Origin: Bugula neritina
Lineage: Eukaryota; Animalia; Bryozoa
Reading direction: 5' to 3'
Length of the DNA stretch: 64,000 bases
Assembly (NCBI GenBank): GCA_964035545.1
Contig: OZ037765.1
Location: forward strand, 2,604,001-2,668,000
The translations under genes were made by a program, and so were the position numbers. Position 1 is the first letter of the stretch, and the number at the start of each line of letters is the position of its first letter. The notes beneath the pieces were generated by a model, which ran no database searches, had not been told where the DNA came from, and saw only the letters and a list, made by a program, of their open reading frames with translations. Positions 32,801 through 64,000 of the stretch are shown piece after piece.

Positions 32801-34127
32801 AACTTAGAGCACCTGCCGTAACATGTTAGGGTATACACAGCTACCTGTATGGATTTCCACCATGACGCTGCATGTCTTTGCGTTTCCTGTCCAGCTCTCT
32901 CTGTTTAGTTTTCATTGCCTCCTTCGCTTCCCGCTCTTGGCTCTACGAGATATACAATTTGATTGTTTGACCTTGACCTTCCCTTATATAACAGCCTTTA
33001 CTTTCTCATATACGACAGCAAGAGTGTCATTATGCTGCGTACCAACTGCTGTCATCGTTCAACAAGGCATAGAGCCAGCTGACTCAATAGAATATCGACA
33101 GCGACATGAGAAAGGCAAGTGCTGACAAACACGAGCCATGGGTATGGAAATATTACTAAAGAATGAGCATTATATACAGATAGTCATCTTTTATCCAATG
33201 CTCAAAAATTTAACAGTAATTTGAAACAGAGACTCCTCTACCCATATAGGGAGGTAACTAGTAAACCTTTTGAAACAACAAAAATGGATGTTGCTAGCTG
33301 ATGACAGTGAGGGAGACACCCACCTCGATGAGAGCTCGTGCAACTTTCTCCTCGTGAGAATCCATCTGTAGAAGAGTGTTGATCTGCGCCAAATTGACAT
33401 TTTCTCTATAGCCTAGGGCCACGATTTCGTCAAAGGCGAATATAATTTGAAAGGAGTTCTCTAAGATCACGCTTTCTTCCAGAGACCTGCCATATTCCGG
33501 CACCTGAAGCCAAACATCAACCATTAAATAACTTTGAACAGCAGCACCATTCTAATACAAAACATAGAATATACTTGTCACCGTGAATATAGATCAGTCT
33601 ACTTACGACTTTAGCAAATAGCCTGAGTGTATCCAGATCTTCCAAAATGTTGCTGGCTTTAGTAGTGATAAGTACAACAAACAGCTGCTCTAAGGCTTGG
33701 TAGACATATCTCACGCTGTCGGTCTCTACAAACGTGTGCTGCTTTCCTGTGTTCATCAACTTAGGGAAAGCTGCCAACAATCCCTCAATCCTGGCCCGCG
33801 ACATCTCCACAAACTGTCTTGACACAAGCACTGCAAAATACATTGAAATCACAATTACAATCAACTTAATTTGAAAATAGTTTGCTATATTCAATGTAAT
33901 CAAAATCATTATAATTACAAGTTCAATATCATACCTTTGCCAGATTTATTGCACACAGCTGCTGCTAAGAGAACCTGTAAAATTCAATTTTAAATTATCA
34001 TCACAATAGAAAGATTTAAAATCACATTAAAAATGCGGTATGATATGATTCAATTGTAACTAGAATGTGCAGAAACTGACCGTGTTACTAGACAAGCAGT
34101 GACTATGCTTTACAAATTTCTTACCAT
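29803..34127 (-). CDS. ARCN1: Coatomer subunit delta (delta-COP, archain)
   Basis: ATG|gtaag at 34125-34127, then [13 protein letters not shown] (33935-33974), [26 protein letters not shown]...[15 protein letters not shown] (33607-33830), [19 protein letters not shown] (33324-33503), and mu-homology exons ending EKYEIV* (29803-29889). Probable non-coding first exon near 34981-35100. Confidence 0.96.
32725..32835. repeat. Direct tandem duplication of ~56 bp in an ARCN1 intron
   Basis: GAAAAGGAGCATG.GCAGAACTTAGAGCACCTGC.GT.ACATGTTAGGGTAT occurs twice. Confidence 0.8.
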
Positions 34128-36353: not shown

Positions 36354-39300
36354 CTAATGCAAGCTTGTAGCTGGATGCATTCTAAGATTTTCATTTATGG
36401 GAGGTGTGGTGGCGCTTTGCTGTGCGGTGTTGCTATGACGATGGTTTGATACATCCTGGTTTAGAGGCTGCGGTCTATTTGATGGGTCATCAATGTCAGA
36501 ATAATGATGATTCACAGCAAAGTTTGACCTTTGGTTGACCTCACATCTTCCAGACTCTCCATGGACAAACTCTGTAAACAGTAAGCGATAACTAATCAAC
36601 AGTCACAAAGTTACAAAGACAATAAAATAAGCAAATTTCAAATTGCTCTGTAGTATTATATTGTACAGGATTGAATAATTTACAGTTCAATTTCTTAGGA
36701 ATATACAGCTTGTTATGCAAAAATAATTTATGAATCTGATGTAAACATTAAGAAAAAATTTTATCGCGAGGCAACAAAAAGTTACAATTAAATAATAACT
36801 GTTGCTTCAGCTTGTGTTCTAGCAGTTAAAGCTTTGGTCCAGTACAACACGAGTCAGACTGCAGTCATCATAAAGCAATTGTGAAATTTGAAGTTGGTTT
36901 AAAATATATTCTAAGTATTCCTAATGGTTTATAATGAGACCAGTAATTTTGCTTAATGCTGCTGTGATATAATTTACAAATTTAATAGAACACGCCCAGT
37001 TATACAGCACAAAAAGTAGACATAATAAAACTGTATTATACTAGAATCAATTGTCATGTTGATGTGATATATTACTATCATCACTTATATTCTCACCAGG
37101 ATGTGGATTAGGGGGAGGGAGGGGTGGAGAGGGAGAGAGAGAATCACGTCCCTTCAACACTCCATTAACCTCTGGTCAAAGATAAACAAAAGTTTTTGAA
37201 AGAAGAAAATTGCTCATCATAAATGCGACACATATTGAAAAACCTGCAGCTAAAAAAATAAATACACAACATCAAAATAAAATTTTCAGCTACGAAATTA
37301 ATAAACATAATTATATTATTATTAAATATTTTTAAGTGGTTTAGATGGTTATAGCTGTTTTATATTCAAGGTTAACACAGTTCGAAAGTTTAAATATTTA
37401 GTTTCATTACTCGTTTATGCAAACTGTACATGAAATAGGAAACAAATGCATATCTGTATTATTCTGCAAATTGTGCTGGGTTGAAGTAACACTATTCACT
37501 ATCCAATAACTGGACCTGTCTTGAATATAATTCACTTTATTTAAAAAAGGTAATAATACTATAAATGTACCTGCTAGTTCAACATGATTAGCTTTGAAGT
37601 TGATGTCTTTATGTTTAATGGTTCTGAAAGTGTATCCAGTATAGGCAATTGCAACAGCGAGCAATACTGTTAAACTGGTAAGCATAAAAATGACAATAGG
37701 CAACACCCAATTTGATGACTCATCCCTGTCTAGTTTGTCTGTTTCACCATCACCTGATCGATTAGATACTTGATTGAGAAATGTACAAGAACATTGTGAT
37801 GAGGGACAACTGGCCGTAACATTGTTTGGATCAATTTCTCCTCCAATGTAATACACAGTTTTGGCTTCTTGCTCAAGTTCCCCATTGGTAACAGAATATA
37901 CATGCTTATATACAGCCTGGTTTCCAGATTTAACAATGTTATAAATTTTATAGTTCACTTTGCCATCACCTGTTGAAAGAAATGGTAAATAAACTTGTGC
38001 ATGGCTGTTTACAAATGTTGGGATCTTTGTTTTATGCAACAGTTCAAGGAAATGCTTTTTTCCAGTAGCATCTCCAAAAAGCCTGGTACAATTTATTGAA
38101 TTAAATTCTTGATAACAATAAGATTCTTTAGTAGCATTTTTAATAGCATATGCTACCACAAGTCCGTTCATGACATTATGTTTACCAACAACATTCTCAA
38201 AATCTAGGTATTCACCATTAAAACCTGGTTGAGACAGGAACTGTGAGTTTAAATCACAGGGCGCATCCTTAGCTACGGCAGGGTGATAACTATTTGGAAG
38301 AAAGCAATTGAAGAATTGCTGCCAAAAATGTATAAAAACTGAGTTGTCCTTATTGTTAGTAGGTTTTTGATTATGCAAAAACTCTTTAAAATAGTTTTTT
38401 CCTTTTCTCGTCCATGTGTACAAATTATCTTTCAACGAAAAAGTTAGCGACCCATAAACAAAATCTTGAAATCCATCAATGACATCAAGACGATTGCCCC
38501 AAGTTTCACCTCCAATTAAAATGATTCCTCTGGCTTTCCAGTCCGGAACGTGTTTTGAAATTTTTTTTATCAAGTTCCTAATAAATATGTTTTCTGCAAA
38601 AATAATAATGGGCCGAAGCAGCTTGTTGGTTCTAGCTAATCTGTTTATATTGAGAGCCATCGCTTGTAATTCGTCGTTTGAATTCTGAGCTGCCATTCGA
38701 AATGAAATACAAACTCTATTTGCTTTAGCATGCTTTTCTATCATTTGAGCACCGGTTTTACCATAGACAGTTTTGTCATGAATCAAACCAGTGTTGTTCC
38801 AACCATTCTCTAAAATGAGCTTAATGATAAACTTTGCCTGTTCTTCGTCATTAGGCACATTTCGGAGAAAAGTTGGGTGCCAAAGACGGTCACTCAACCA
38901 TGTGCTCGTGCTTTGGGAAGAAATTTGAGGAATGTTGTACAGACTTAAATAAGCTTGGAGAACAATAGAGACCCCACTTGATGTGTCTCCTAGAAAGACC
39001 ACAAAGTCATTGGGGTCAACATGGTGTTCGTTACCCTGAGGGTCACTGAGAACTGCGGAACTCCCAGACTTAAAAATGCTGTTTAGGATTTTATGAGAAC
39101 CAAGGATACCGTCGCAGGTATCAATAAATAATGTACTAAAGTCAATGTCAGTTATGTTTTTTATCTGTTGCACAGCGTAATAGAATGACTGCATAGTAAC
39201 AAAACCATTGATTGACACATCGGGGCCACAACTGTGCATGCCTTCTTTTACACTTACTCGGGATGTGTAGCCAATGATGTATTTAGACTTGCCTCGAATA

Positions 39301-42300
39301 TAAATGTAGGGATCTCTGTCCTTTGTGCAATGGGCACAATTTGTCTTGCATCTAAAACCGCTGTTCTCTGGCAGAAGACTTATTGGATGCTCATAATACT
39401 GCCACGTACGATTATAAAAATAAGTTCCCAAAACTTCATAATTCCAGTTAGTTGCTAATGCAAGTTGAAATGCCGGTTCATGGTTGTTGTTGACAATATC
39501 TCCATTGCTCTTGAATCTGGCTTCTACTGTTTGATTTGCTACTTTAGTTTTTATGTCCAAATGCTGAATTTGATCAAATATTTCTGAGTAAAACAAATCA
39601 GTATTACTCAAAATCTCACACGCTCCCGATACATTGCCACAATGCTTACTGTGCGTGTATTTAAAGGCTGCTAGGAAACTTACAACTGCTTCTATCATCT
39701 GCTGACCAAAGTCTGTTTCATTTTCAAAATCACAAGTGCCTGCTGGAGCACACTGCTTCTGAAAGTCAGCTATCATTTTATCAATACTTTGTAAACCACT
39801 TTGACTACCTTGGCGGCGGTGCCTAACATACTCCTTCAGCTGATGATTGGGTTTACTGTGTGGAACAATAGTCAGAAGAGTTGGTTTGTTTATTTTGTTG
39901 TTACGAGACAATCTAGACAATACTTCTGTTGAGCTACCAATTTCATCAGATACCAGAAACACCTTCTGGGCAGCAGCAAGCGTTAGGTCTTCCAAGTATG
40001 AGTCAAGGATTTCCAAGGCTACAATTCGAGTTGAGTCAAATCATTTTCACTCATTACAAAGTAAAAAGAAAAAATATTTTAGCTTTTAGCAAAATCAAAT
40101 TAAATTGAAAAATCATTGGTGGACACAGGCACACACCTCATGTGCACATGCTAATTTTAAAGACAAAAACTTGAATATGTCTCTATTAGAAACAGAATTA
40201 CATTGCACCATACAAACTTACCTCAAAACTTATGTGCACACAGCATCTTAACTAATCTAGTATGTAACTCAGTGTACTTTTATTCAATTACTTACAAAAT
40301 TAAATCAATAGTTTAAGCTTATATTAAGGCAACTTACCTGTATACTTTTGCCCAAAGTAAATAATGCCTTCTGCATTGTTGTAAGTAATTTCTCTGGCAA
40401 TACCCTGGTAGTAAGATTTCCTGTCCGGAGGGCTCACATCTACTTGAACTTTCCCCGAGAAGCAAATACCCTTGGACTCGCCGTATGCCTGTATAGCTGC
40501 AGCGCTACTCCTACCATACTCATTATCAGTAAACACCAGCAAAAAGTAGGACCAAGCCATGTCTATTGCTGCATCTACTATAGCCTAAAATAAAAATAAT
40601 AAAAATATCAAAATCAGTTGCGTTTGATAAATATAAACAGACAAACGCTTTTAAGCGAGTGCAAAAGTCACATAACTAAGTAAAAAAAAGTAACTGAGTA
40701 AAGATAGTAACAAAGCCAATAACTATTAGAAAAAGATCATCACTTAAAAACTCTCTACTGCATTATAAAGTACTTTATATAGTTCTCAAGAATATGGGTG
40801 TACCCAAAACCTACCCTGCATTGAAGATCATCTGTGGTGGAGGTACGAAAGAGAGTGTGATATCTACTCTTATCATTTAGCTCAGCAAGGGTTGCAGAAG
40901 GGGTTATCAGTGGCACCCTCGTATCGTTAAGAAACTGAGCTACATGCATTGCATTAGAACTTAGACTAGGTCCCAAGAACCCTGAAATATAAACTCGAGT
41001 GTGAGCAATATCTGTATAGCTTTAAAGAATTCTCTACATGGATAATGTATTACTATGAGGCTAACCTTGATATAAAGGATTAGAAAGTGGGTCTTCCTAA
41101 AAATAAATTCAATTTATAGTACAAAGATTTACTACGAGTAGTATAACAATCATATGTTAAAACCTAGTCTAAACTTGTGAGGAAATTGTATAATTCTCTT
41201 TCAAGATATAGAAATTTCATACACAGTGCCAAGGAAAAATAACTAATTGAAATAAAATGCTTCATTCAACAATAGATAATACAATAGAGTACGCATGATA
41301 TATTATAGGCCTACTAAAGTTGAATGATCAAGTAACAATTGCTGTTGCAACCAACAATGCACGTGAGCCAATCAGAAATGCTTTTTTACTACTTGTATGC
41401 TGTGATGTCTAAACCATAGTAGTACATTAGATTCTGTATAGTTTATGAAGATTTACAACAAACTAATTTAATTTCAATTTATTCTTACATAATACTTGCT
41501 GCTTTCAGCATAAATTTTAGTATTACACAAACTATGTTTAGAAACCTTTGAGTAAAATAGACTGCTATCCACAAAAGTTTACCGTTTTGCTATCTTTCAA
41601 ATCTACAAACCAAAGCTAATTGTACTTTCTATTTTCTCAAATTGATACTAGAAGAGACAATCCATATTACTAAAGCTGTTGATGGCTTTGTTCTATGGTC
41701 TATGCTTTAGAGTTTAGTATATATAAGTAAAAAATCAGCTGCCAACTTTAAGCTTTGCTGGATAATAATAATAATGTGGTATTTTATAGAGTTATCTTCT
41801 CAATACCCATTCTTATAATTATTCACATTAAATAGGGATTCTACGCCCCCTTAATTTTGGTTCACTTTTGCTTACTCATTGCAAATTGGTCTGAACTAAC
41901 TGACATTTCCGAATTTCGGCCGATTGTTCTAGACTCCCTTTGTTTGACCAGTATAAAAGAAGGCCCATTTTAAGCTTCCATTTAGTTGAAGATTGGAGCT
42001 CACACTGGAAGGAACTCTACTACATAATAAATCTCACCACACAAGACTCTCTTATCTCTTATCACTTGCAAGGAGTTATGTTCTCTGCCTGATTATATTC
42101 AATAACCCACAGGTTACTACAATAATTATTCATAGCACAGCCCTCAGTTATTCGCCTCTATTATCAGCAAATGAAATAAAAAACTGACATTTCACTTTTC
42201 AGCACACACAATACAATGCCACGCATGGTTGAAAGCATAAGCCATGCTTACGAAGACATCTATATTTGCTTTACTAATTCATGCAGTATTCTATTACGAA

Positions 42301-45300
42301 GCTACTGAAAATATTCAAGTTTGACTGTAATAGTTTTTTAATTACCAAGCAACAGAGAGTTTTCATTCTCAGGAGTGGATAAGCTATGAGGGGTAGATAA
42401 GCTGTCAGGGGTGGATAAGCTGTCAGGGGTGGATAAGCTGTCAGGGGTAGATAAGCTGTCAGAAGCGCTGCTCAAACAAATCTGCTTGTTTGTCCACAAG
42501 GAAATGGGAATATTCAGTGCTGACTGTCTCACTGCCAGAGTTTTGTTCTTGCATATGTTCTCTATCACCAGGTCTAAACATATATGTCACTGTGTAACAT
42601 AGATGTATATACTGTCACTGTGTAATATAGACATATATATGTCACTGTGTAATATAGACATATACTGTCCCTGTATAATATAAACATGTATACTGTCACT
42701 CTTTAATATAAACATATATACCAACACTGTGTAATATAGACATGTATACTGTCACTGTGTAATATAAACATATATACTGTCACTGTATAATATAGACATA
42801 TATACTGTCACTGTATAATATAGACATGTATACTGTCACTGTATAATATAAACATATAAACTGTATGCTAAATAATATAGAAATAAATGTATACTATCAC
42901 TATGTAACATATAAGACATATAAACTATCACTGCAGTGATATAGTGGCAGTTTATATGTCTATATTAGACACGTCTAATATAGACATATAAACTGCCACT
43001 ATATAATAAAGACATATATGCTATCATTGTATAATATAGACATATACTGAAAACTGTCACTGTATAATATAGATATATAACCAACACAGTTATAATAGGT
43101 TGTAATTTACAACAAATGTGTAATTTACAATAGAAAGGTAGGTGATAAACTATAGACAGTAGCAGCACTGCAAATTACTCTTAAATCTTGAAAAGAAGCA
43201 TCAGTAGGTGGAGGTAATCTTCAAAGGAAGCTGTACAAGGAAATTTATATTTCCAAAGATTACAGTAATGATTAATTGACAGAACTTATTCCTAGACATG
43301 CAAAGAACTAACATCTATGCTGATCAACGAAAGTAGGATAATAGTTAGCTTGTACTACAACAGGGAGACAGGTTTTGATGACTGAACTTTAAGTTTACAG
43401 TTATTGCCTGTTCTAAGAACCAGCTGCTGTAAACATAGTAAACAGTGATGCTTGTTAGAAAGAAAATAATGAAATTGTTAGAAAGATCAAAAATTTTTAT
43501 AAAATCATATTATCTAGAAATTATTGTAAAAAACTACAAAATAAAATATTAGGAAGTTGTCTTTGAATCATCGTATTATCTTAACATATGTAAGGCTATA
43601 GGATGTGTTACCATTGTACTGTAAAAGTATGGAAATTGCCTGGTAACAATAGTTTGCAGTAGCTGGTGAATTCCCTTAGCTTGCTCAAGGATCACAGATT
43701 ACCATTTTAATATTAAGCAAATGTAAGTCACACCCTTTGATATACAATGAAACAATTGGAATTGCTTAGGAAAGTTTACCTATCCCATATCTTTTACCAT
43801 TTGTCAACAAACAGTTTCTTTATTTAAATAAATATCATGTAATCCTAAGCTTGCTTTAATACTTCCTTGTTAAACATTGCAAGCGTTTTCAGTCAGAAAT
43901 GGAATACAATTTTGTAAAACACAATTTTCCAAATCAGCATCCTTGATATTCTCTATAAGTAAGGCAATATAACTGCCTTTATTTTTAAACTAATGATCCA
44001 TCGAAGGCAATACATAACCATTGAAGCAATAACTTGAAAGAATTCAAGACTATTACAATATTGCTATAATTACTAGTAGTTGCATTATGTTGTATATTAG
44101 GTACTTGAATAAAGCTACTTAATACAGATGTACACATGTTACAACCTTTCTTTTATTTGAAACCATTACCATCTGATCATTATTTTTATACTTATTTCAG
44201 TTATTAAATCGAAAGAGGTTCAGCTCATAATGAAATAGAAAGCTAGAATATTTTCAAAATATATTCAATGAGTGAAATAAAAATTTTTACTAGTGGGAGC
44301 TTCAATTGGAATATAATTTGCATATATTTGTGAATATTTGTCAACGAAATATTTACCAAATGTTGTATAATAACCTATTGTGAAGAAATCCCCTTCAAGA
44401 TGTATGCTAAAACACCGAGACTGTTCATATTAATAAGTAAAGTCAAAGTCTTCATAGTTTTTCTTCATAATATACAGCTGCCAGGAGTAAGAAGGTTATT
44501 TGATTTGGTTAGTAATCTCTAGAAAATGTTATTGATCATACTGCAATCATGTTATTCTACTTCTCAGTGCAAAGTTGCTGACTGCACTTTATTTTTTATC
44601 CAATTTTTTAATGCCTGAGAGATTATGACTCGTGTCTAGTTTTTCTCTAAAGAGTGAAGAGCAATCTTTTATATACAGTAGAAGCTGAAATCTCTCTAAG
44701 TTAAATATTTCTGTATACATGTAACAAAATATGTGAAAGAGTAGCAGTTTTAGAACCTAAAGTATTACACATAGGTAAGACAAAAAGAATTATGTAATTT
44801 CTTTGTTGTGCATAGACTGCTATCAGTTCTGTAAAGATATCTAGAAATGCCCACCCTGGTTGATGATAACAAAGGAAACTCTGTAGTCTATGATATATAG
44901 TCCTCACTGTTAACAGTTGGTAAGGCAGTTGTATATGGAATGGACTGTTATAATGAAAGAACTACATAATATTATGGTGTGCTATAAATGATACACATTT
45001 ATGCTAGGCTGTAGTTTATGTCAAGTTACAATCACTGCAGAAGATGATCCAATGACGTCTGCTACTGCAGAAGATGATCCAATGACGTTTGCTACTGCAG
45101 AAGATGATGCAATGACGTCTGTTACTGCAGAAGATGAGTTCTGATGAAGTGACGTCTGCTAATGTATCATGACTCACCGTAAGTGATGCCAGGCACTGCC
45201 AGCTCTGTCTGGTTACTATTGACTAAACTCAAGACATACTCTGCTGCCAGAGCTAGAGACAGCGCTGAGGGATTTACGTCAGCTGATGGTGCACAGGTTG

Positions 45301-46100
45301 CTGTTGGGTTTAACTCTAGTAAAGCTACTAAATGAACTCTATCAGTTTGAGAATCTGAAACAGGAAAAAAAGTAAATTATAGAAAATATGTCACGCCATT
45401 TATTGTGGCAGTAATCAGTTATTGGAAGCTTGTTAAACAGTCAAATTTTCTTATAACCACAAAATGCATACTTTTCTTTACACCAGCAAGAGTTCCACAT
45501 GGCTTGGAGCGGTGCCTGATTACGTAAAAGTGTAGACTAGACCAAAACTTCTATCTACTGAGCTATGCTCATCATTTCGATAACCCGATCTTTTAAAGAT
45601 GTAATCTTTTCAAAAAAGCACTTTTCACAAATGTATAAACGCTTTATCTACCAAACTATACTGGCTCTGGTTTAAATTTTTAAATCGCAAGAGATTGTTC
45701 ATGGCTGATGATGCCACATTAAAGTGGAGCATTAAACTATAGTTTTTAATAATTTTATATTTATAATATCTAAAATTAAACAATTACAGTTTTACTGAAG
45801 AGATAATTATATTTATCAATGTGAATGCATTTTGTCAATTAGTTACTGTTTATTTAAAAAAGCATAAAAATAGCTTAGATGTAAAATAATATTTTGTGTC
45901 ATTTCCTAGTAATAAGCATTCCTTATCAAAATGTGGTAAATAAACATCAATATCTGGTCAGATTAATATTACCAGTAGAATAGTAAAGACATAAATTACA
46001 AACCTTTACAGATCGCAGCTTCAGTGCCTTCAACAGTTGAGACTACGATGATTACTAGTATGTGGATACTAATAGAAAGAGTGTTACAAGTTTGCAGCAT
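36354..46100 (-). CDS. Class C GPCR-related single-pass receptor, paralog A (signal peptide, 2x Venus flytrap/ANF-receptor domain, 1 TM, short tail), about 1193 aa
   Basis: Seven in-frame exons: 46004-46100 (signal peptide; alternative in-frame ATG at 46118), 45178-45354, 42346-42573, 40815-40981, 40338-40584, 37571-40018, 36354-36571. mGluR-like motifs occur twice (GPSLSS..PLITPSAT..LFRT..D and GDTSSGVS..IPQISSQSTS..FLRNVPND; FWQQFFNC). One hydrophobic helix, WVLPIVIFMLTSLTVLLAVAIAY. Confidence 0.85.
42372..42461 (-). repeat. Coding 18-bp tandem repeat (about 5 units, SLSTPD) in exon 3 of receptor paralog A
   Basis: GGGGT(G/A)GATAAGCTGTCA repeated on the + strand, inside the 228-bp exon 42346-42573. 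Confidence 0.85.
42585..43080. repeat. Intronic minisatellite, ~28-30-bp unit (TATACTGTCACTGTATAATATAGACATA)
   Basis: Visible tandem array beginning about 10 nt from the exon-3 acceptor of paralog A; contains one inverted unit. Confidence 0.9.
45034..45160. repeat. 30-bp minisatellite (GATGATGCAATGACGTCTGCTACTGCAGAA), paralog A intron 2
   Basis: About 4 units next to the exon-2 donor; the same unit occurs at 54744-54890. Confidence 0.9.
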
Positions 46101-46794
46101 TTTCTCAGCTATTAGCATAGCTACCCAACTATGTTACTTACGTGTAACAAAGTGTCTATAAGCAGTGTGATCATCAAATGGTTAGCAATTCACAGAGGGA
46201 ATTATATGGCTCATGCATGATTGGTTAAATATAAATATAAACATACTTTACATATTTTTTCACTTCATACAAAGACAGGCCCCTAAAAAGCTTTACAGCA
46301 ACTTTGTGTCTCAAATTAAACTCTTTTTTTGTGAAAGCAACCCAGCTGCTTTAAAACTATTAATTTGTGAAAAATAGTAAATAGAAGAAATAAATTAAAT
46401 CATTTTGTTTATATCAAGATTTTAACTACCCAGGGATTTTGTGATGATAGGTTAATACAACCTAGACATAGCTTTAATAACAGCATCAAAGGATGGCATA
46501 TAATTGTTTGTAAAACCTCAAAGTTACCAGATGCCTTGTTGAAGTTCTCTTTATTGTAAACTTTCACTTAATTAAGTAAGTAATTTATGCTAAGTTTAAA
46601 TAGTATGGATTAGTGAAGTTCATAAGTTTAGACTGAGAGTTTAAAGCTATCAGCACCGATCTTGTGTCACCCCATTTCACCATCCTGTAAAATCATGCCT
46701 CTAGCTCCTAATTAATACTAAATATTGATGCTTGTGCTTCTTTTTAATTAATTCTGTTCGCTTGCCTAATGCAACAATCTTTGCATAATACTGT

Positions 46795-46880
46795 TATAAA
46801 ACTTTTGCCCCCCACTTGAATCCGAACTCAAGACCTCAGGCTTGCAAGCAGGCGTGCTAACAATTACACCACAGGGACCT
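46795..46880 (-). mobile_element. tRNA-derived SINE-like repeat, same family
   Basis: Reverse complement reads GTGGTGTAATTGTTAGCACGCCTGCTTGCAAGCCTGAGGTCTTGAGTTCGGATTC...GGGCAAAAGTTTT. Confidence 0.7.
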
Positions 46881-48359
46881 CTGGCTAACCTTAATCAAGA
46901 AGTTGAGATCATAAGACGTTGAGTAAGTGGCTGTTCAAGTCAGATATAAAAACTTATTAATTATTATTTATTATAGCAGATTAAAAGTCGAACAATTAAT
47001 TTTAGTAAAATGTCTAAATGCTAATTTGTGGAGTATAAAAGTTAAAGCAAGTATACTGCATATAAAACAGTACACACCAAAGGTAACAATGTTACTTATT
47101 GTATCTAAATGTGCTGTGTTCATCATGGAATCCTGATTGATGTTAGTATTCACTTGTCAATACAGAATTTATGCTGCATGGCAAAAGATGGTGCAAGTGT
47201 TGAAATAAGCAGAAGAGTGAAAGTTATTAGACCGTAAAAAACAAGTGCTAATATGTATCTAACGCCTACCTTTGTAATGAATCAACTTTTCTACCCTGAG
47301 GTAATATTTTAACAAGGAAATAAACTTTAGATGCAATTAAACATTAAATGAAAGCACAATAAATCTTAAAGGAGATCATTGCATCACATCAGGCAAACTT
47401 TTAAAACTTATTTTGCTAAATCCAAGGCTTTAATGAGAAACTTAAAACAAGAAATACTTTTATACATTGTATTTTAATATATCACATTTGCACCTTGTTT
47501 GGTATAAGTACATTTTTTAGTTTTAGCTAAACAATACGTTTAAAGCTAATTCCTTACTAAACAGAATTATTGCAACCTAAATTTACCAGTAAAGTGAAAA
47601 AGGACATGTAAAGCCAATTTCCAATTGAAAATTCTATATTATTGGCATTTTGTAAACCTTTTTTCATGAGTTGAATGTGTGGATGCATGGAAAAAGTTGA
47701 AAACTTTTGGCTAAGATGAAGAATGTGACAAAAAGTTATGTTTTAGTCTACACTTCAAACCAAATGCAAAGAACATTTAATAAACTTAGACTGTTGAGAT
47801 TTTTCAATTATTGCACTTGAGTGTAATTTAGTTTTATATTAAGCCTTTTCAAGGATTAAATTGCCTAAAACATAATATTATAATGAGAAATTTGATAGCT
47901 AAAAATTAGAATTTGTTTTTAAATGTGTTATGCTTATTTTACATGTACTTCTAGGTATTCAAAAATTTTTAAAGTTTTAATAATTTTTTATTATTTTAGA
48001 ACCAAATACCATCAAAAATTAAATTGAAAGAAACTAGCCTAAATTAAATTAGAGTAAATGACACTAGTAATTGAAATAATATACCCTAACATAGTTGAAT
48101 TTTTTTTTAAATCATTTGAAGCATTGTAGTGTAAAAAAAAATACCGAGATTTTACATGCGTGAAGAAGCTGCTACAAAATATTTTATATTCATAAAAAAT
48201 ACTATTACATTAAAATCTGATTGAAGCTTTGTAAATCACCATCTTTAGGTATGTAGATGATTTGTACACATAATTATTTTTAAAACAAGAAAAAACTCAA
48301 ACCAAAAAAACTTGCAAAAACTGTAACTGCTATTACTACTCCTAATCTATTGTCTGTAG

Positions 48360-51300
48360 CTACATCCCTTTGTCCCAGATTTTACTCTCAGACTCTTCCG
48401 TTAATGGAAGCGGTTTGCTTACTGCTGAAATGTTTTCACCACATGGTCTAGAGATATTTAGACTCAGACTATTCTCATCAAAACTCTGCTGCCTTTCGGG
48501 CTCTTCTGGCAGCAAATTAGCATTATTCCCGGCAGAACTCTGCTGCCTTTCGGGCTTTTCTGGCGCCGGGCTTGTCATGCTCGTTTCCTCTATCATCACT
48601 GAATCAAAAATTCCATCAATAATATCTGGTTGGTTTGCAGCATTTGAACATATGTGCTGAGCTGAGTTAGATTGAAGCATGTTTCCTAAAAGGAAGAAAA
48701 TTCAACATCATGATGATAAAAAATCGCACAGTTTTATGAAATAGTAGTGTACCTGTTGTAATAATACATTGCAAAATAATGATATTTATTTTATGTTGCC
48801 TAATTTACAGCAGCTAGATTTAGTATAGTGTTAAACTAATCTGATGAAATCAACTTTTTAAATATTTAGTCAAAAATAAAAGTATATTCTTTTAAACTAA
48901 TTGATTCATGAATCATTAAGCAAAAATTTTGCACATTTAAATGGCGCTTGCATTGTTAAACTAGATTTACCTTTGTGAGAACTAGTCTTCTCGCCCTTAT
49001 TCTTGAGATGAAATGCTTTGTACATAATAACTCCTGCTAATACTAACAAAACAATGACGAGCAAAAAGCAAAATATGAGAAGCTTTGGTATAGCAGCGTC
49101 TCCATTATTTCTCTGATTGCTTTGCAAAGAATTTTCTTTCAAATCTCTACAAACTGCTAAAGAGCAGTCACTGGGAGAACAGAAAGACCGCTGTAAGGCG
49201 CCATTTTTGTAATACGACGGAGATACTAGAGATTTCAAGACTCCATCGGACACCTGGTAAACTTGACGGTAAGTTACTGTTGGCGTTTCACCAGATTGTA
49301 CAAGGTTATACAACTCGTAATTTATCTGCCCTTCTCCTGAAGGAAGAAATGGCGAGTACAATTTGGCATGACTGCCTGCCTTTACTGGGACTTTTGTTTC
49401 TTTCAAAAGGCGAACGAATGTTGCTTTACCTTCATCTGTAGTAAAAAGTTTAGCACAGTCTGTCATATTCGAACAGAACTGTTCTCCGTATTTTGCCTCA
49501 CGAATAGCATATGCAGTGGAAAGTCCAGCTGTCATAATATGTTTTGCTTTCCCACCTTCAAGCTCATTACCATCAAAAACCTCTGTCAGTGAGTTGTATG
49601 GTGGAATACACGGCTCACTGCTAGGATAATTTTTCTCAATTCTACAATTGAATGTCTTTTGCCAGAAGTTAATAAAGTAGGGATCTTTTCTACGAGTGTC
49701 TGGTGACTGTCTTTCTATAAACTTTCTGAACTGATTTATGTTACTACTGTCTGTCCAATTATAAACATTCTGAGCTAACGATATGGAGATGGTGCCTTGA
49801 AACAAATTACTTGTGCGTTTGATTATTTCCTTGTTGTTACTCCACGTATCACTAGCAATAAAAATGTTCCCTCGAATGCCCCAACTTGTATCAATTGTTT
49901 GGATAGATTCTAAAATGGAATATAGCTTGGATTGTTCTGCAAATAATATCAGTGGCCTGGGGAGTGCGTTATCTGCCCCTTTTGACTTTAACTTAAAAGC
50001 TAATCTCTTAGCAAAATCTTCATAAGCAATCTCTATTTTATGCGAAAAATCTATACAAATTCCTTGTTCAGCAGCGTATAGCTCTATTCCTTCGGCGCCT
50101 GTTTTACCATAGGCGGTGTCTGTATAAATAAGGCCAATTGAAGTCCAGTTACTCTTAACAGCTAACTCTATCATAAACTTTGCTTGAGCACTATCCTCTG
50201 GCACAGTTCTTAGAAATGAAGGGTTACGGTCTTTGTCAGTTAGAAGCGTGCTTGTACTCCCATATGATATCTGCTGTATTCCAAACGGAGCTAAAAATGA
50301 TTGAATGATCATTGAGATGTCACTAGACGTGTCTCCAATGAATACAACAATATGGTCAGGTGGGTAGACATGTTTAGTACCGTCACTTTCCAACAAATGT
50401 ATTTGGTTATCAGCTTGGAAAATACTACTCATTGTACTCAAGGTTAGCAGTTTAGCATAGCATGTGTCTAAATAGAGAGTGCTAAAATCTATGCCAGTAA
50501 TAGCTCTCATTTTTTCAACTGCATAGTAAAATGCTTGCATCCGAATGAAGAATGTTGAATCGATGTCGTCACGACATTTTGCAGAGTCATTTGTGCTTCC
50601 ATGAAGCGGTCCGGATCCAGCGATAATAAAGGTTGATGAATGTTTGATAAAAACATAAGGAGACCGCTTCACAATATGCTGACTTGGATATTGAACGCAC
50701 CGCGAGTTAATGTTTGGTAAAATGTTTTGAGAAGTCATGTTCCAGGATCGAGAATGCTCATTATCTTCGTAGGTGCCAATATGATGGTCTACATTTAAAT
50801 CATACAGTTCATATAAAGGTGAAGACACATATTCAAACTCATCGCCGGTCATTTGAAACCGCTTGAAGGAATCCTGATTATTGGTTGTAAATATTTTAGA
50901 GCTGTTGCGGATACTGTTGTGTAAGCGTGAGTAGAACAGTGCGTAGTTGCAGAGCAAGGAACACCCGGTGTCATTGCGTTGTGCTACTTCCTTAAAATTT
51001 GTGAGCAGCTCTACTACAGTTTGCATCACGTTAGTCGATTCTGCGTTGTTCCATAAACTTTCTTCCCCTTCTTGACAATACCTTTTGAATCTGTTCATCA
51101 TATTGTTGACAAACACTAAACCACTCTTTCTACCAGAGTACCGATCAGTCACATGCTTTACAAAACTTTGAGAAATTGGTGCTGTTGGAGTCAACACAGC
51201 AAGTATGTGGAGTTTAGACAACGCTTTTGGATATCTCGTCTTTCTGTCTTCGTTTATTGTCAATTTCTCAGAAGTCAAAAACAGTTTTGAAACAAATGCT

Positions 51301-54300
51301 GTATCATAGTTGATGTATTCTTGGCTCACCAATAGTTGAAAGTACATTTCAGCCATATTGGAACCTAAAAATCAAATAGAATGTAGTAAACATTTTAATG
51401 CGCATGCCCAATAACAAAGTATATTTACCTAATTGGCAAACAAAGACTTTAAAGTTAATTGACACAATCAAAATGTTTATAGACCTGCAACTTGATAGCC
51501 TCATTTCAGAGTTGCTACGGTCATGATTTCTAACTGTAAAAATCTTGATGACTGTGCTTAGATCTAATCACACAGCAAACAAAATAATTCCTTTCATTTA
51601 CTTTTTTGTATAATCCCAAATGACTATTTGTTTTATTACCACAAACACTGGAATAGGTTTGAAAACCAACTATAATGCATAATTCAAAATAGAGGAACAT
51701 ATGCTTAAAAGCAATTACTCATACAACTATAAACATTTCTAAAACGATATTTGTTTATAATAAAAATTAAAACAGCTGTTCACTAAGAAATATGAAATGA
51801 TTTTGATAAATTTAGCAATAGCCAAATTTCTGAACTGGGAGAGTAAAAAGCTGTAATCTAAAAGTGTACCAGTTTCGAGGTCTCCAAAGTAGATAGAGAC
51901 ATTTGCATGGTGTTTGGCAATATCTTTTGCCACAACTCTGTAGTACGACTGAGGGTCAGCTGGATTTGTCTGAACTTTGAACTTTTCTGCAAAGCATATG
52001 CCTCGCTCATTTCCGTATTCTTCAATCGCTGCTGCTCCTTGAACACCAACGTCGTCATCAGAGTAAAGGAGCAAGATGTAAGACCAACCTTGCTTTATGG
52101 CTGCATCAACTAGAGCCTAAAATAGCAAACATACTATATAAATACATTAAGAATCTTGAACTCAAACCTACACACCCTAGTTGAAGCTCAAGACTGAAAT
52201 AATATTAAATTTCTCCAAACAGCAAACTACTCCAAGCTGAATTTATATAATAAACCATAAATCTACCTTACATATATATAACAGTTAGGCATAAAAATTT
52301 GCAACTCTCTGCTTAAATTTAAAATAGTACAGATTTTTGTACCCTACAGATTGGTTTAAACCATGCTTTATGTTTAAGCTTGCATGCAATGTTTTTACAA
52401 CCAACAGTACCAAACACCTGCACACACCTGGCCTTTGGTGATATCAGAAGGAACTGTTCTAAACACTGTGCTGTACTTGCTCGTGTCTGTCAATCCTGCA
52501 AGTGTTGCTGTGGGTGACAAGATGGGAATTCTTGTGTTATTAAGAAATTGGCCAACTGCCACAACATTACTATTCTCAAGGGGTCCAACAAAACCTTCAA
52601 TAAATAAATAAAAGTCATTTATTTGAATTAAAGAATGAAATAGATGATATACTGCAAACTTTTAGCATTTCATTAACATAAGAGATTTGCCAATATATCA
52701 ATGTTAGGTGAGTTTAGCATTACTATTTAAGCTTTTACTAAACAAATATTACTGAAATCAAAATGGTGGTTACTATAACATTAAAGTACCAAAACTTTTT
52801 ACTATATAGGTATACATGAAATCTAGAAGTCAGCGAAGTTATGTAAAATTTATTAATAAAATTTTCAACAAATTCAAGGTTGAAATCTAAATACCAAACT
52901 TCATAAAAACTAAACTAAAAAAGTTGCTAAGAAATGATGAAAAATTAAATAGAAAGCAGGATGTTTGGAAACCACGGTGCTATATTAATTATCACATCAT
53001 TGTTTATGTAGTGTTGAGTTTACCCAGCGGCCCAGTGGTGTGATGGTTAGCACACTTGCTTGCAAGCCAGAGGTCTAGGGTTCGATTCTCAGTGGGAGTA
53101 ATTATTTTTTAGTTTAAATTGTGCAATCACAGGGTATATTGCTTCTTCTTAGAATCCTTAGCTTACTGTACAGTATTTACTTAGTCAATACCTCTAATAT
53201 AGCTACAGCTCTATAACTGTGATGAAAATCAGAAATTCGATTCCTAATTGTTGATTATTAGTAAAGTCTACCTGATTCCTACTTAAACATGATGGTAAAC
53301 ACCTTTATTTGAAGATGTAGCTGAGAACGGGGAACTTAAATTGTCCCTGTAGTGTTGACTCTACTCAGTGGTCGCAGTGATGTAATGGTTAGTGTGCCTG
53401 CTTGCAAACCAGAGGTCTGAGGTTCGAATCCTACTTGAGGCAAAAGTTTTTATAACCTCTATTACTAACTTGTGGCATTTACATCACAATTTTGCACAGA
53501 AGCTTTTCAGCCAAACCATCTATTACACCAGCTATCATGAGTAGATGTTTAGTGATTTATTAGAGCAGAAGCTCTGTATAAGGCAGCAACCAGCGCCATT
53601 TCAGTGTTGTGTATCAACATGAATGATGTTGATGCAGAAACGAGATTCATTATCGCAGTATATAGCAATGGAGTAATATTATATTTTCCACTGACACATA
53701 CCTAACTTAAATAGCTGAGATTGTAATAATGTAGAGTATATTCCTTTAGCAAGTAACAACCTGGTGTTACAGGATTGAGAGTTTGAAAGTTATAGCTTCC
53801 AGTAATGTTTCCGCTCGCTCATATAATAAACAAAATGGCAGACAATGTAATAATACAGAGTATTAGTACCTAGTAGTAGAGAGTTGTCTACTTCTACATC
53901 TGATGAATGTAAGCATTGCTCCGTCTCAGCGCTATTCCATATTGTGGCAGGCAAGTGTTGGGCGGCGGACCTTATAGCCATACTTTGGTTGTTGGTTTGA
54001 ATGCCAAAAAATTCAATACCTACAATCAACCATTCTTTTTAGGATAGAGTGAATATGAATGAGAAAATGTTTTATTCAGTGTTATTTAGAGTCTATTCAA
54101 GTCTAACTAATTTCTTTTAGTATTTATAGCCAGATAACTTGCATGCATGACTTTGATTCAGTAGTAATACTACATGTGTTATGTAGTAGTACTAGTATTA
54201 GTAGGCCTTATAGTAAGTTCCACTGCTCTTAATATACATTAACTATATAATAGTTACAATGTTAAAGTAAAAATATACATATTTGGCATATATTATATCA

Positions 54301-55458
54301 TAGAAAAAATAGGAAACTTAAAATATCACAATTTTGTTATTCAAATAAGTTTGGATCATTTTGAAAATAAAAACTTATAAAATACAGTCTCATGGCTGGT
54401 ATTCTGTAAATCTATGAAGTGTTTTCAAAAGCATCTACTAATAACATAGTAGTGATGTCATATATAATGACTGCCTTAAGATTTGGTATATGTAATATAT
54501 TATATAATATATATGTATGAATAACAGACATAAATTAAATTATATAGAGTACAGTATGAATTGCCAAACAGCATGATAGATGATGCATTGAAAGAAATTA
54601 TTGATGAATTAATTTTATAACTAGATAAAAGTTCAAGGCTAGACTGTGATCTAGGAATGGGTTTACAAAATATTAAATAAAACACATATGCAATCAACGA
54701 TTAATAACCCCAAGCCAAGTGAAAGTAGAGTTGACATGAGCTCTACTGCAATGACGTCTGCTACTGCAGAAGATGATGCAATGACGTCTGCTACTGCAGA
54801 AGATGAGTTCTGATGCAATGACGTCTGCTACTGCAGAAGATGATGCAGTGACGTCTGCTACTGCAGAAGATGATGCAGTGACGTCTGCTAATGTATCATG
54901 ACTCACCGTAAGTGATGCCAGGCACTGCCAGCTCTGTCTGGTTACTATTGACTAAACTCAAGACATACTCTGCTGCCAGAGCTAGAGCCAGCGCTGAGGG
55001 ATTCACGTCAGCTGATGGTGCGCAGGTTTCTGTTGGGTCCAACTCTAGTAAAGCTACTAAATGAACTTTCTTTGAACCAAAATCTGAAAGTTATAAACAA
55101 AATTATTACAGCGAGTACAAGCTTCTTCATTATAGGTGCATTATAAGCTCAGCTAACTTCTTGAAGTAAAAACTTTAAGGGGAAAATTAGCTCAGTTACA
55201 TTATTTCTAAAACTGAAGCCTAAGCTGGTTTATAGAGCATGATGAAAACTAATACACATGCTCTTCAAACCTCAAACCAAGTTACATTGCCTAAAAGATG
55301 GACTTTACTATAACACTTGCCATGCTTGATTTATTTGTACCGTGAAGCAAGTTTATAGCAATTATGTGTATAATCTCACCTGTACACGATCCATTCACTG
55401 CTTGCAGGGAACTGACCAAAGTGATGAGATGGATAACTGAGCAAATGAATTTCTCCAT
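48360..55458 (-). CDS. Class C GPCR-related single-pass receptor, paralog B (signal peptide, 2x Venus flytrap, 1 TM, short tail), about 1179 aa
   Basis: Seven in-frame exons with the same phases as paralog A: 55380-55458 (MEKFICSVIHLITLVSSLQAVNGSC), 54907-55083, 53870-54019, 52428-52594, 51870-52116, 48971-51364, 48360-48685. Motifs VFRTVPSD (VFT1) and QQISYGSTS..FLRTVPED..YGKTG..ASDTW..FWQKTFNC (VFT2). TM LLIFCFLLVIVLLVLAGVIMY. Confidence 0.85.
53011..53100 (+). mobile_element. tRNA-derived SINE-like repeat, same family
   Basis: GTGGTGTGATGGTTAGCACACTTGCTTGCAAGCCAGAGGTCTAGGGTTCGATTC. Confidence 0.68.
53352..53456 (+). mobile_element. tRNA-derived SINE-like repeat, same family
   Basis: GTGATGTAATGGTTAGTGTGCCTGCTTGCAAACCAGAGGTCTGAGGTTCGAATCC...GGCAAAAGTTTT. 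Confidence 0.7.
54744..54890. repeat. 30-bp minisatellite, paralog B intron 2
   Basis: About 5 units of the same unit as 45034-45160, including the shared GAGTTCTGATG variant. Confidence 0.9.
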
Positions 55459-56327
55459 ACTGAGCTACTTTCAGCTTGTAGTAGCTGCTATATTATAGTA
55501 ATGCTGGAGAAAATGTAGATGTTGAATCCAGAGTGAGCAATGAAGCAAATAATAAAGCTTGTAGTCTCATGTTAAAGAGGAAGTAAAGTAGATGAAGCAT
55601 TAACATATATAGAATTTCGAAATACCTTTGCAGCAAGCTTGCAGTCTGCAAACAAACATGTGACTACTGGTTTTTTTGGGGAACTACAATAACAATCATA
55701 TAGCCAGTTTCAGGTTTTGCATCAACAGATGTAATTTTGCATAAGATTGCATGGTGTTGGTATATTATGTATTACCAGTTTTTTTATTAATGTTTTTAGA
55801 CTATGTTCCATCAACACATGTATCATCAGTTTATATTAATATTTAAGGCTTTCGAAGAGCTGGCACAACTCTACCTATTGTGTTTGTATCATAAAAATTA
55901 GCTTAATAGAAATACTATCAGCTCAAATAATTTAATGGAGCAAAACTAAGCAAAATGCATTTCTTTCGAGAGCTTTGGCCACCATGTATTTATATTAACA
56001 TATGCTGACAAATCATAATTTACATTCAAATTTACAAAAAGCATTACATCAATTCCGTAATGAAAAGAAAAATAATTACAAAATTTAGGGCAGTGAAATT
56101 AATTGTTTAATAAATATGCCAACTTGTAATACCAGGTAAAAACATGACCAGAGGTAAAAGTAAACAAATGTTATATACACAGGAATATTCAAATGTTTGC
56201 ACATAGTGTGAGGTTAGATTATACAAAATATAACATGAATAAATAAGACAACAAAATTTGGTATCTCGTGAATTTATACATTCAATACATGCACTGGTAG
56301 ATTCTTCTCACTGGCCTAAAATACAAG

Positions 56328-63365
<7,038 letters not shown>

Positions 63366-64000
63366 TTACTATTCTTTATGTTGACTTCTTCCAGAGCTGA
63401 TGACCGATTCACTACCAGGAAATAACGTTGCTAACACTGTAACACAAAAAACACAAATGGTAACCTGGATTTACTTGAGAATAACTGAGTTACTAGCCGA
63501 GTCTTAGTATTTAATTAAGTGTTTCAGATTATCTGAAGGGGAAGCTATTACATTCAATTGTCTCAGTGTGATACGCTAAATATAATTGACAGTTGCAAGG
63601 AATATTACAATAATTCAAATAATGCACTACAGATAACTTTTCAACACTTGGTGGTTTGGCAATCTACAATTTTTCTCTGATTAGTAGAACAAGTGAAAAA
63701 TTTAATAATATAAAACTAAGAGTAATAAAATACTGATTAAACCCTAATCAGTTCATGGAGGTTATATCTAGTCATTCCCAACCCACTGGAAGTACTCAAA
63801 GAGATAACGATGATTCAGAAAAATTTTTAATGGAGTGCCCAAACTTGTAGGTAATTAGAAAAATTAATATTTGGTTACACAGTTGGTGCCACAACCAGAA
63901 TCTTTGGTCAATTTCAACTGGTCTGAGTGCTTACTGAGTTAGAATAATAATGTGGTGGTCACTGTTAATTTATGATTTGATACAAATTAATCTCATTACT

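What the first reader, a model, noticed from the sequence alone, without database searches (positions are those of the whole stretch)
36354..55458. Tandem pair of single-pass receptors with two Venus-flytrap domains and no 7TM
Seen in sequence: two complete, intact 7-exon genes with identical intron phases. Each encodes a signal peptide, VFT1, a short Cys linker (CKTNCAHC in A), VFT2, a short Cys cluster (CPSSQCSC / CSPSDCSLAVC), one TM helix and a roughly 90-125 aa low-complexity tail. No 7TM, kinase or cyclase exons follow: A is followed by the ARCN1 5' region and B by the first exon of A. Established: mGluR/CaSR/T1R have one VFT plus a nine-Cys domain plus 7TM; natriuretic-peptide receptors have one VFT plus 1 TM; iGluRs have channel helices. 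Inference: this is a non-canonical class C-derived receptor family (co-receptor, decoy/clearance receptor, or G-protein-independent amino-acid chemosensor) in which the two VFTs could form an intramolecular pseudo-dimer. I cannot tell from here whether the architecture is already described in related invertebrates.
Basis: partly seen in the sequence, partly recalled or inferred. Interest (0 to 1): 0.8.

Follow-up and report, generated by a model that had tools for sequence, protein, structure and literature searches.

The report
Double-flytrap single-pass receptor gene pair
Two neighbouring, intact genes of a bryozoan encode cell-surface proteins that carry two glutamate/taste-receptor-type ligand-binding 'flytrap' domains on one membrane anchor, with no G-protein-coupling or enzyme part; they belong to an unnamed family, shared with molluscs and brachiopods, that I found described in no paper.

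Summary
On the minus strand lie two intact 7-exon genes: A at 46100..36354 (1193 codons) and B at 55458..48360 (1179 codons). All introns are GT-AG and the intron phases are identical. Each encodes a signal-peptide-like start, VFT1, a short linker, VFT2, a small Cys cluster, one TM helix and a short tail. One exon carries the C-terminal half of VFT1, all of VFT2 and the TM, so the tandem build does not depend on splicing.

Both VFTs are class C type, with mGluR, CaSR and T1R as best solved relatives. The genome has no 7tm_3 or guanylate-cyclase exon anywhere near the window. Against a sibling species the ectodomains are under purifying selection (omega 0.18-0.28), while the tails are weakly constrained.

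The family is not unique to this locus. At least two more paralogues sit in this genome, and about 45 database clusters share the build in Watersipora, many molluscs and Lingula, all labelled uncharacterised. The VFT1/VFT2 duplication is ancient. The same VFT1-VFT2 module forms the N-terminal part of 5-VFT 7TM receptors of a nemertean and a bivalve.

VFT2, and VFT1 of A, keep the five amino-acid-binding signature residues. Function is inferred: a membrane-anchored amino-acid-type sensor that acts through partners.

The scan noted this family before on other DNA of this genome. RNA could not be checked.

The parts
36354..46100 (-). Gene A, 7 exons, 1193 codons: signal-peptide-like start, VFT1, Cys linker, VFT2, Cys cluster, TM, tail
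   Evidence: exon chain, phases, GT-AG, single stop; exon-wise tblastn with Watersipora P0004
46004..46100 (-). A exon 1: ATG, hydrophobic signal-peptide-like stretch, phase-1 donor. An in-frame ATG also lies at 46118.
45178..45354 (-). A exon 2: start of VFT1. Lies inside a 305-bp patch that is 92% identical to B.
42346..42573 (-). A exon 3 (VFT1). Holds a 5 x 18-nt in-frame repeat (DSLSTP)5 at 42371..42460, in the loop that is disordered in the model of the homologue.
40815..40981 (-). A exon 4 (VFT1): carries the Ser, Thr and Asp signature positions
40338..40584 (-). A exon 5 (VFT1): carries the Tyr signature position
37571..40018 (-). A exon 6, 815 codons in one open frame: C-terminal half of VFT1, linker CKTNCAHC (39327..39350), VFT2 (about 37809..39311), cluster CPSSQCSC (37785..37808), stalk, TM (37647..37703), juxtamembrane
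   Evidence: purifying selection
36354..36571 (-). A exon 7 (proposed): low-complexity tail and stop. Weakly supported.
   Evidence: phase and acceptor; 84.9% identity, no contrast with flanks; acceptor kept; earlier stop in the sibling species
48360..55458 (-). Gene B, 7 exons, 1179 codons, same build as A
48971..51364 (-). B exon 6, 797 codons: C-terminal half of VFT1, degenerate linker (50676..50702, one Cys left), VFT2 (about 49182..50660), cluster CSPSDCSLAVC (49149..49181), TM (49026..49082)
   Evidence: omega 0.18-0.29
48360..48685 (-). B exon 7: tail and stop
   Evidence: 92.9% identity, no indel, against 81-82% in the flanks; splice sites kept in the sibling species
54763..55067 (-). 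Patch 92% identical to A 45034..45338, covering exon 2 plus the first ~145 nt of intron 2. The rest of the two genes has almost no DNA similarity. I read this as gene conversion between old paralogues.

Best explanation
What it is (shown). A and B are old tandem paralogues, about 33% identical in exon 6. Each encodes a type I single-pass membrane protein whose ectodomain is two complete class C-type Venus-flytrap domains in series. A short Cys cluster, a short stalk, one TM helix and a 90-125 aa tail without a recognisable domain follow.

They are members of an unnamed family found in bryozoans, molluscs and a brachiopod. The VFT1/VFT2 duplication predates the split of those phyla.

How it most likely works (inferred). 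VFT2 in both genes, and VFT1 in A, keep the five residues that hold the alpha-amino-acid moiety in mGluR and CaSR. The clamshells therefore most likely close on an amino acid or a similar small ligand.

The tail is short, poorly conserved and has no catalytic domain, so the output probably does not come from the tail. I propose that the protein is a membrane-anchored accessory sensor that acts in cis with a partner, most likely a canonical class C receptor. The argument is of the gene-fusion ('Rosetta stone') kind: in a nemertean and a bivalve a VFT1-type unit followed by VFT2-type units is fused in front of a canonical VFT-7TM receptor.

My odds are about 0.9 for the identity and architecture, and about 0.35 for the partner-dependent sensor mechanism.
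For: Architecture in the window. VFT1 C-half, VFT2 and TM share one exon.

Class C type of both halves: phmmer against solved structures gives T1R3, mGluR and CaSR over the full domain. The AlphaFold model of the 40%-identical Watersipora homologue has pLDDT 82.5 and pTM 0.69. Foldseek finds mGluR5/1 VFTs with TM-score up to 0.85.

No 7tm_3 or cyclase exon near the window.

Selection against sibling-species contigs. For A, exons 4-6 are 92-97% identical with no indels, against 80-86% in the introns; omega is 0.24-0.28. For B, omega is 0.18-0.25 and the only indels are in frame.

Family. About 45 representative clusters have two VFTs, one TM and a tail. The named ones are from Watersipora, 12 mollusc genera and Lingula. 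Contigs of 4-5 kb carry one uninterrupted 1246-1317-codon ORF, as expected of spliced mRNA.

Tree of VFT units. VFT2 forms one clade (96/82) and is sister to units 2-4 of the 5-VFT 7TM receptors (96/91). VFT1 plus their unit 1 are set apart from everything else (100/99). The 5-VFT proteins carry ANF_receptor x5 plus 7tm_3.

Ligand signature S, T/S, D, Y, D/E is kept in nearly all VFT2 and most VFT1 units. mGluR-like controls align on the canonical motifs.
Against: No ligand, partner or tissue is known for any member.

The gene-fusion argument is indirect. I did not check whether this genome has a 5-VFT receptor, and nothing points to a specific partner.

VFT1 of B has lost two of the five signature residues (Asn for Ser, Val for Tyr) and two linker Cys. 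It is still under purifying selection (omega 0.18), so not every flytrap need bind an amino acid.

Many mollusc members end in PDZ-type C-termini such as ISRV. That would also fit an autonomous, scaffold-bound receptor.

The signature residues show the capacity to bind, not binding itself.
Confidence: 0.75

Rival explanations
1. Ligand sink or clearance receptor. The double flytrap binds and internalises or buffers an extracellular amino acid or peptide without relaying a signal, as the natriuretic-peptide clearance receptor NPR-C does with one flytrap, one TM and a short tail.
For: The build is the same in kind: ANF_receptor ectodomain, one TM, short tail without a domain. The tails are weakly constrained. 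The Watersipora homologue has a YxxPhi-like motif just after the TM.
Against: The flytraps are class C type, not NPR type. Nothing was tested on uptake. Mollusc tails of 260-750 aa with conserved PDZ-type ends are more than a sink would need.
Confidence: 0.2
2. Autonomous single-pass receptor. Ligand-driven re-orientation of a dimer is passed through the TM to the tail, which recruits cytoplasmic adaptors (PDZ scaffolds, kinases). This would work like the Venus kinase receptors or NPR-A, but with the enzyme supplied in trans.
For: Class I or II PDZ-type C-termini occur in many mollusc and brachiopod members, for example six clusters ending in ISRV. The TM helix is predicted with confidence and continues into the cytoplasm in the model (residues 1039-1070).
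Against: The tails of A and B do not align with each other. A's tail aligns with the Watersipora tail only over 11 residues (E 0.05). The bryozoan tails lack the PDZ-type end. Tail omega is 0.55-0.74 on few sites, and the stop has moved in the sibling species.
Confidence: 0.15
3. Artefact: either a mis-joined gene model (7TM or enzyme exons missed, or two genes read as one) or decaying pseudogenes.
For: There is no transcript evidence for A or B. Exon 7 of A has no conservation support.
Against: One 815- or 797-codon exon spans VFT1 C-half, VFT2 and TM. The nearest 7tm_3 match over the family cut-off on this chromosome is about 8 Mb away and the nearest cyclase match 2.3 Mb away. Omega is 0.18-0.28, and neither exon 6 has a frameshift or an internal stop in the sibling species. 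RefSeq and other models in 15 genera have the same build, and intron-free 4-5 kb contigs end after one TM plus tail. Even without exon 7, read-through ends in a stop within about 55 codons.
Confidence: 0.04

Closest known systems
Class C GPCRs (mGluR, CaSR, T1R)
   Same: Both flytraps are of this type by sequence and fold. The five residues that hold the amino-acid backbone are kept. A C-x3-C start, like the first cysteines of the cysteine-rich domain, follows each flytrap (my reading of the motif).
   Different: There are two flytraps in series. There is no nine-Cys domain, no 7TM domain and therefore no G-protein-coupling part.
5-VFT 7TM proteins of Tubulanus (XP_074641006) and Sinanodonta (KAL3856574), with an Octopus relative; all uncharacterised
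   Same: Their unit 1 nests among the VFT1 units. Their units 2-4 are the sister group of VFT2. The same module is therefore used.
   Different: They continue with a fifth, canonical flytrap and a 7tm_3 domain. The window's genes stop after one TM.
Venus kinase receptors (VKR) of invertebrates
   Same: A class C-like flytrap on a single TM in invertebrates; activated by amino acids according to PMC4026697 and PMC3703292.
   Different: VKR has one flytrap and an insulin-receptor-like tyrosine kinase domain. No kinase is present here.
Natriuretic-peptide clearance receptor NPR-C
   Same: ANF_receptor ectodomain, one TM and a short tail without an enzyme.
   Different: NPR-C has one flytrap of the NPR type and binds a peptide across a dimer. 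Here there are two class C-type flytraps with an amino-acid signature.
Bacterial BvgS/EvgS sensor kinases and trypanosome receptor adenylate cyclases
   Same: Tandem flytraps followed by one TM (PMC4352136, PMC6027212). This is an analogy of design.
   Different: Different periplasmic-binding-protein class or lineage, with a cytoplasmic kinase or cyclase. Not close relatives.
Ionotropic glutamate receptors
   Same: A two-layer ectodomain made of two clamshells, the upper one an ANF_receptor-type domain.
   Different: The lower clamshell is of another type and is interrupted by channel helices. There are no channel helices here.

Membership tests
Class C GPCR (Glutamate family) | Class C-type Venus-flytrap domain | tested here: met
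   Present twice. Pfam ANF_receptor; best solved relatives are mGluR, CaSR and T1R over the full domain; Foldseek TM-score up to 0.85.
Class C GPCR (Glutamate family) | Nine-cysteine domain (NCD3G, PF07562) | tested here: not met
   No PF07562 hit in A, B or seven homologues. Only a 3-Cys cluster follows each flytrap.
Class C GPCR (Glutamate family) | 7tm_3 heptahelical domain | tested here: not met
   One hydrophobic peak per gene. No PF00003 match in the window; the nearest match over the family cut-off on this chromosome is about 8 Mb away. The same crude scan found 7 helices in a CaSR-like control.
Natriuretic peptide receptors (NPR-A/B/C) | NPR-type ligand-binding domain on one TM | tested here: not met
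   The single TM is met, but every listed solved-structure match to either flytrap is a class C receptor and none is an NPR.
Natriuretic peptide receptors (NPR-A/B/C) | Kinase-homology and guanylate-cyclase domains (NPR-A/B) | tested here: not met
   No such Pfam hit in the exons or in homologues. No PF00211 exon in the window.
Venus kinase receptors | Intracellular tyrosine kinase domain | tested here: not met
   The tails are 90-125 aa with no Pfam hit. The homologue's tail is disordered in the model.
Unnamed spiralian double-VFT single-pass family (Watersipora XP_067948068, Aplysia XP_005105500, Pecten XP_033746774, Lingula XP_013389729 and others) | Order of parts: signal peptide, VFT1, CxxxCxxC linker, VFT2, Cys cluster, stalk, one TM, tail | tested here: met
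   B departs in one respect: only one linker Cys is left.
Unnamed spiralian double-VFT single-pass family (Watersipora XP_067948068, Aplysia XP_005105500, Pecten XP_033746774, Lingula XP_013389729 and others) | VFT2 falls inside the family's VFT2 clade | tested here: met
   Bryozoan VFT2 clade 100/100, inside the VFT2 clade 96/82.
Unnamed spiralian double-VFT single-pass family (Watersipora XP_067948068, Aplysia XP_005105500, Pecten XP_033746774, Lingula XP_013389729 and others) | VFT1 falls inside the family's VFT1 group | tested here: inconclusive
A groups with Watersipora VFT1 (SH-aLRT 95). B sits beside them on a very long branch (85).
Ionotropic glutamate receptors | Lig_chan pore helices and an S1-S2 ligand-binding domain | tested here: not met
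   No such Pfam hit and one TM only.

The most novel reading that the evidence does not exclude
The free-standing VFT1-VFT2-TM proteins are the split form of the giant 5-VFT class C receptors. They would dock in cis on a canonical class C GPCR and add one or two extra amino-acid-sensing layers above its own flytrap. Spiralians would then have a modular way of tuning chemoreception, with accessory flytrap subunits, that is unknown in vertebrate class C pharmacology.
Probability: 0.2. Interest if true: 0.85.

Novelty: new variant of a known kind. Interest (0 to 1): 0.6.

Why it matters
Class C receptors are the textbook case of a flytrap dimer driving a 7TM dimer. These proteins keep the sensing part, doubled and with intact amino-acid-binding signatures, and have no known output domain. 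They have been conserved across at least three spiralian phyla.

The family poses a clear and testable question: how does a flytrap signal without a 7TM, kinase or cyclase? It also links to a second unstudied group, class C GPCRs with five flytraps in series.

In bryozoans and molluscs, larval settlement and feeding respond to dissolved amino acids (general knowledge, not tested here). Such proteins are therefore candidate chemosensors. The family currently carries only 'uncharacterized' labels or wrong automatic names such as 'mGluR 6/7/8', so naming it would also improve annotation.

Tried and rejected

2. The look-up of encoding contigs for the Watersipora homologue P0004: not on record.

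3. Profile word search with the family alignment returned only the two Watersipora proteins and one GPCR. It added nothing on taxa.

4. Seven literature searches for tandem, double or multiple flytraps in animals, bryozoans, gene symbols and 'ANF_receptor without 7TM' found only bacterial BvgS/EvgS, trypanosome cyclases and VKR papers.

5. The 'V2 part' line used a wrong frame, giving omega 1.1 and a false stop. It was redone in frame.

6. The giant Polypterus 'CASR, partial' proteins with 8-10 flytraps and no TM between them look like merged tandem genes and were left out of the trees.

7. Intramolecular pseudo-dimer: not testable, because the fold tool returns no coordinates or PAE.

VFT1 of A and B was read exon by exon, by reference. 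The full-length fold used the natural homologue P0004.

9. An alternative terminal exon for A at 37050..37175 was considered. It was not adopted because it has no homology support; I did not check its splice sites or frame.
Full report
**1. The observation**

The region holds two large minus-strand open frames, 37407..40016 and 48906..51356. Pfam places an ANF_receptor domain in each (E 1e-29 and 5e-34). It also finds pieces of a second ANF_receptor (profile positions 56-108 and 124-184) in small upstream frames.

I used a 1148-aa Watersipora subatra protein found by the word search (P0004, 40% identical to A) as a guide for exon-wise tblastn. I then read the junctions directly. This gave two 7-exon models.
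- All introns are GT-AG.
- Intron phases are 1,1,1,0,1,1 in both genes.
- Exons 2, 4 and 5 have equal lengths in the two genes.
- Each gene has a single terminal stop. The CDS is 1193 codons in A and 1179 in B.

Exon 1 of each gene starts with ATG and a hydrophobic stretch. A Cys lies nine residues before the first beta-strand, as in the homologue.

Exon 6 (815 codons in A, 797 in B) is one uninterrupted frame. It runs from the middle of VFT1 through the linker, all of VFT2, a small Cys cluster and the only hydrophobic helix. The tandem flytrap, single-TM build therefore does not rest on any splice prediction.

VFT1 of A and B was examined exon by exon.

**2. Is anything missing downstream?**

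A profile search of the whole 216-Mb genome for 7tm_3 finds about six class C GPCR loci. None is in the window; the nearest match over the family cut-off on the same chromosome is about 8 Mb away. The nearest guanylate-cyclase exon is 2.3 Mb away.

A's stop at 36354 is followed by a gene with a mu-homology domain, as in coatomer delta. B's stop at 48360 is followed 2.2 kb on by exon 1 of A.

**3. Are the genes alive?**

Two genomic contigs from public runs of a closely related bryozoan (87-90% DNA identity) are collinear with A and B.

For gene A:
- Exons 4-6 are 92-97% identical with no indel over 2862 nt.
- The introns are 80-86% identical with many indels.
- Omega is 0.275 for the VFT1 part of exon 6 and 0.236 for VFT2.

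For gene B:
- Exon 6 is 92.5% identical, with two in-frame indels only.
- Omega is 0.18 for the VFT1 part and 0.25 for VFT2.
- Exon 7 is 92.9% identical without indels, against 81-82% in its flanks, and its splice sites are kept. It is a real exon.

Exon 7 of A shows no such contrast (84.9%, one 9-nt indel). The stop has moved in the sibling species in both genes. The tails are weakly constrained, and A's last exon remains provisional.

**4. What the domains are**

Each half of P0004, and VFT2 of A by reference, match solved class C flytraps (T1R3, mGluR1-8, CaSR) over the full domain, at E 1e-23 to 1e-30.

An AlphaFold model of P0004, built with a 42-row family alignment, has mean pLDDT 82.5 and pTM 0.69. 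It shows two complete alpha/beta flytraps, a roughly 20-residue Cys linker of moderate confidence, a disordered stalk, one long TM helix (1039-1070) and a disordered tail. Foldseek returns mGluR5, mGluR1 and CaSR flytraps with TM-score up to 0.85.

**5. The ligand site**

I aligned all units with mGluR-like controls and read the columns of the five residues that hold the alpha-amino-acid moiety. From established structures, as I recall them, these are mGluR1 Ser165, Thr188, Asp208, Tyr236, Asp318 and CaSR Ser147, Ser170, Asp190, Tyr218, Glu297. The controls carry the canonical motifs in these columns.

The results are as follows:
- VFT2 of A has S, T, D, Y, E.
- VFT2 of B has S, T, D, Y, D.
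- VFT1 of A has S, T, D, Y, D.
- VFT1 of B has N, T, D, V and (by eye) E.

Across the family nearly every VFT2 and most VFT1 units keep the set. A minority of VFT1 units (a second Pecten protein, Pinctada, Saccostrea and one transcript) have lost it.

**6. The family**

An exhaustive HMMER search with P0004 gave 3294 hits. Among the best 150, about 45 representative clusters have two flytraps, one strong TM at about residue 1000-1070 and a tail of 20-750 aa.

Those with names are all 'uncharacterized' or 'hypothetical'. They come from:
- Bryozoa: Watersipora.
- Bivalves: Sinanodonta, Solemya, Pecten, Pinctada, Saccostrea, Dreissena, Mactra.
- Gastropods: Bulinus, Batillaria, Haliotis, Patella, Aplysia.
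- Brachiopoda: Lingula.

Pfam finds two ANF_receptor stretches and nothing else in them. Three clusters come from 4-5 kb contigs with a single 1246-1317-codon ORF flanked by short untranslated ends, as expected of spliced mRNA.

This genome has at least two more members, on other chromosomes. One has the same exon partition.

The linker motif C-x(2-4)-C-x2-C and the post-VFT2 cluster are conserved across phyla.

Two earlier notes of this scan describe the same family on other DNA of this genome. One of them names the species Bugula neritina, which I did not verify. I reached my reading before seeing them.

**7. History of the two flytraps**

I built a maximum-likelihood tree of 67 single flytrap units (a quick version is).
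- All VFT2 units fall in one clade (96/82).
- That clade is sister to units 2-4 of the 5-flytrap 7TM proteins of a nemertean and a bivalve (96/91).
- All VFT1 units, together with unit 1 of those giants, lie on the other side of a 100/99 branch.
- The amphioxus 2- and 3-flytrap GPCRs form their own clade, so they multiplied their flytraps independently.

The VFT1/VFT2 duplication is therefore older than the bryozoan, mollusc, brachiopod and nemertean splits. The same VFT1-VFT2 module exists both free on one TM and fused in front of a canonical flytrap-7TM receptor (ANF_receptor x5 plus 7tm_3). The tree is unrooted, so it cannot tell truncation from fusion.

Within bryozoans, A groups with both Watersipora proteins (100/96) and B lies outside. 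The A/B duplication is thus older than that split.

**8. Mechanism**

Shown: two class C flytraps, at least three of the four with an intact amino-acid signature; one TM; no output domain; a constrained ectodomain and loosely constrained tails.

Inferred: the flytraps bind an amino acid or a similar small ligand, and the signal or effect passes through other proteins. I favour an accessory or co-receptor role with a class C GPCR on gene-fusion logic, at about 0.35.

The rivals are a ligand sink like NPR-C (0.2), an autonomous receptor that recruits adaptors through its tail (0.15), and an artefact (0.04). PDZ-type C-termini are common in mollusc members; six clusters end in ISRV. They are absent in bryozoans.

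**9. Novelty**

I found no paper on animal proteins with tandem class C flytraps. The library is limited to open-access text, so absence there is not proof. The genes are new members of an unnamed family that is itself a new architectural variant of flytrap receptors.

Noticed in passing
window 45034-45338 and 54763-55067: Exon 2 and the first ~145 nt of intron 2 are 92% identical between A and B. Elsewhere the genes share almost no DNA similarity (about 33% protein identity in exon 6). This looks like a recent gene-conversion tract between old paralogues. The intron part holds a short tandem repeat.
   Followed up: partly
window 42371-42460: Five in-frame copies of an 18-nt unit (DSLSTP) are inserted in exon 3 of A. 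They fall in the lobe-1 loop that is disordered in the model of the homologue. B and Watersipora lack the insert.
   Followed up: partly
P0018 (Tubulanus XP_074641006), P0024 (Sinanodonta KAL3856574), P0050 (Octopus XP_052832771): Class C GPCRs with several flytraps in series before a 7tm_3 domain: five (about 2800 aa) in Tubulanus and Sinanodonta, and at least three in the 2189-aa Octopus protein. Units are orthologous one-to-one between the nemertean and the bivalve, so the five-unit build is old and not a merged gene model. All are uncharacterised and I found no paper.
   Followed up: partly
P0150 and P0035 (Branchiostoma): Amphioxus has 2-flytrap and 3-flytrap 7TM receptors, annotated 'mGluR3-like' or uncharacterised. 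Their units cluster together, so this is an independent multiplication of the flytrap.
   Followed up: partly
tails of P0029, P0030, P0039, P0043, P0038, P0058 and others: Many mollusc members of the family end in ISRV or other PDZ-type C-termini, and Lingula ends in VFV. The bryozoan proteins do not.
   Followed up: partly
G000:C2:5803214-5808946 and G000:C3:3645942-3652649: Two further paralogues in this genome. The C2 gene has the same exon partition as A and B. The C3 gene has VFT2 plus TM in one exon and only weak VFT1 exon matches.
   Followed up: partly
L011 (SRR4020080) and L014 (SRR4020084): Genomic contigs 87-90% identical to the window and collinear over 9.5 and 4.8 kb. Most likely they come from a sibling species of the same bryozoan complex.
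   Followed up: partly
P0014, P0017 (Polypterus 'CASR protein, partial'): Proteins of 3171-3927 aa with 8-10 flytrap stretches and no TM. They look like tandem receptor genes merged by annotation.
   Followed up: no
window 1-34000 and 56000-64000: The neighbours are ordinary: a protein-kinase exon (2520-2747), doublecortin-domain exons (14737-18404), a TPR gene (about 22000-23700), a coatomer-delta-like gene (about 29900-33900) and a histone-deacetylase gene (about 58000-62000). All are on the minus strand.
   Followed up: partly
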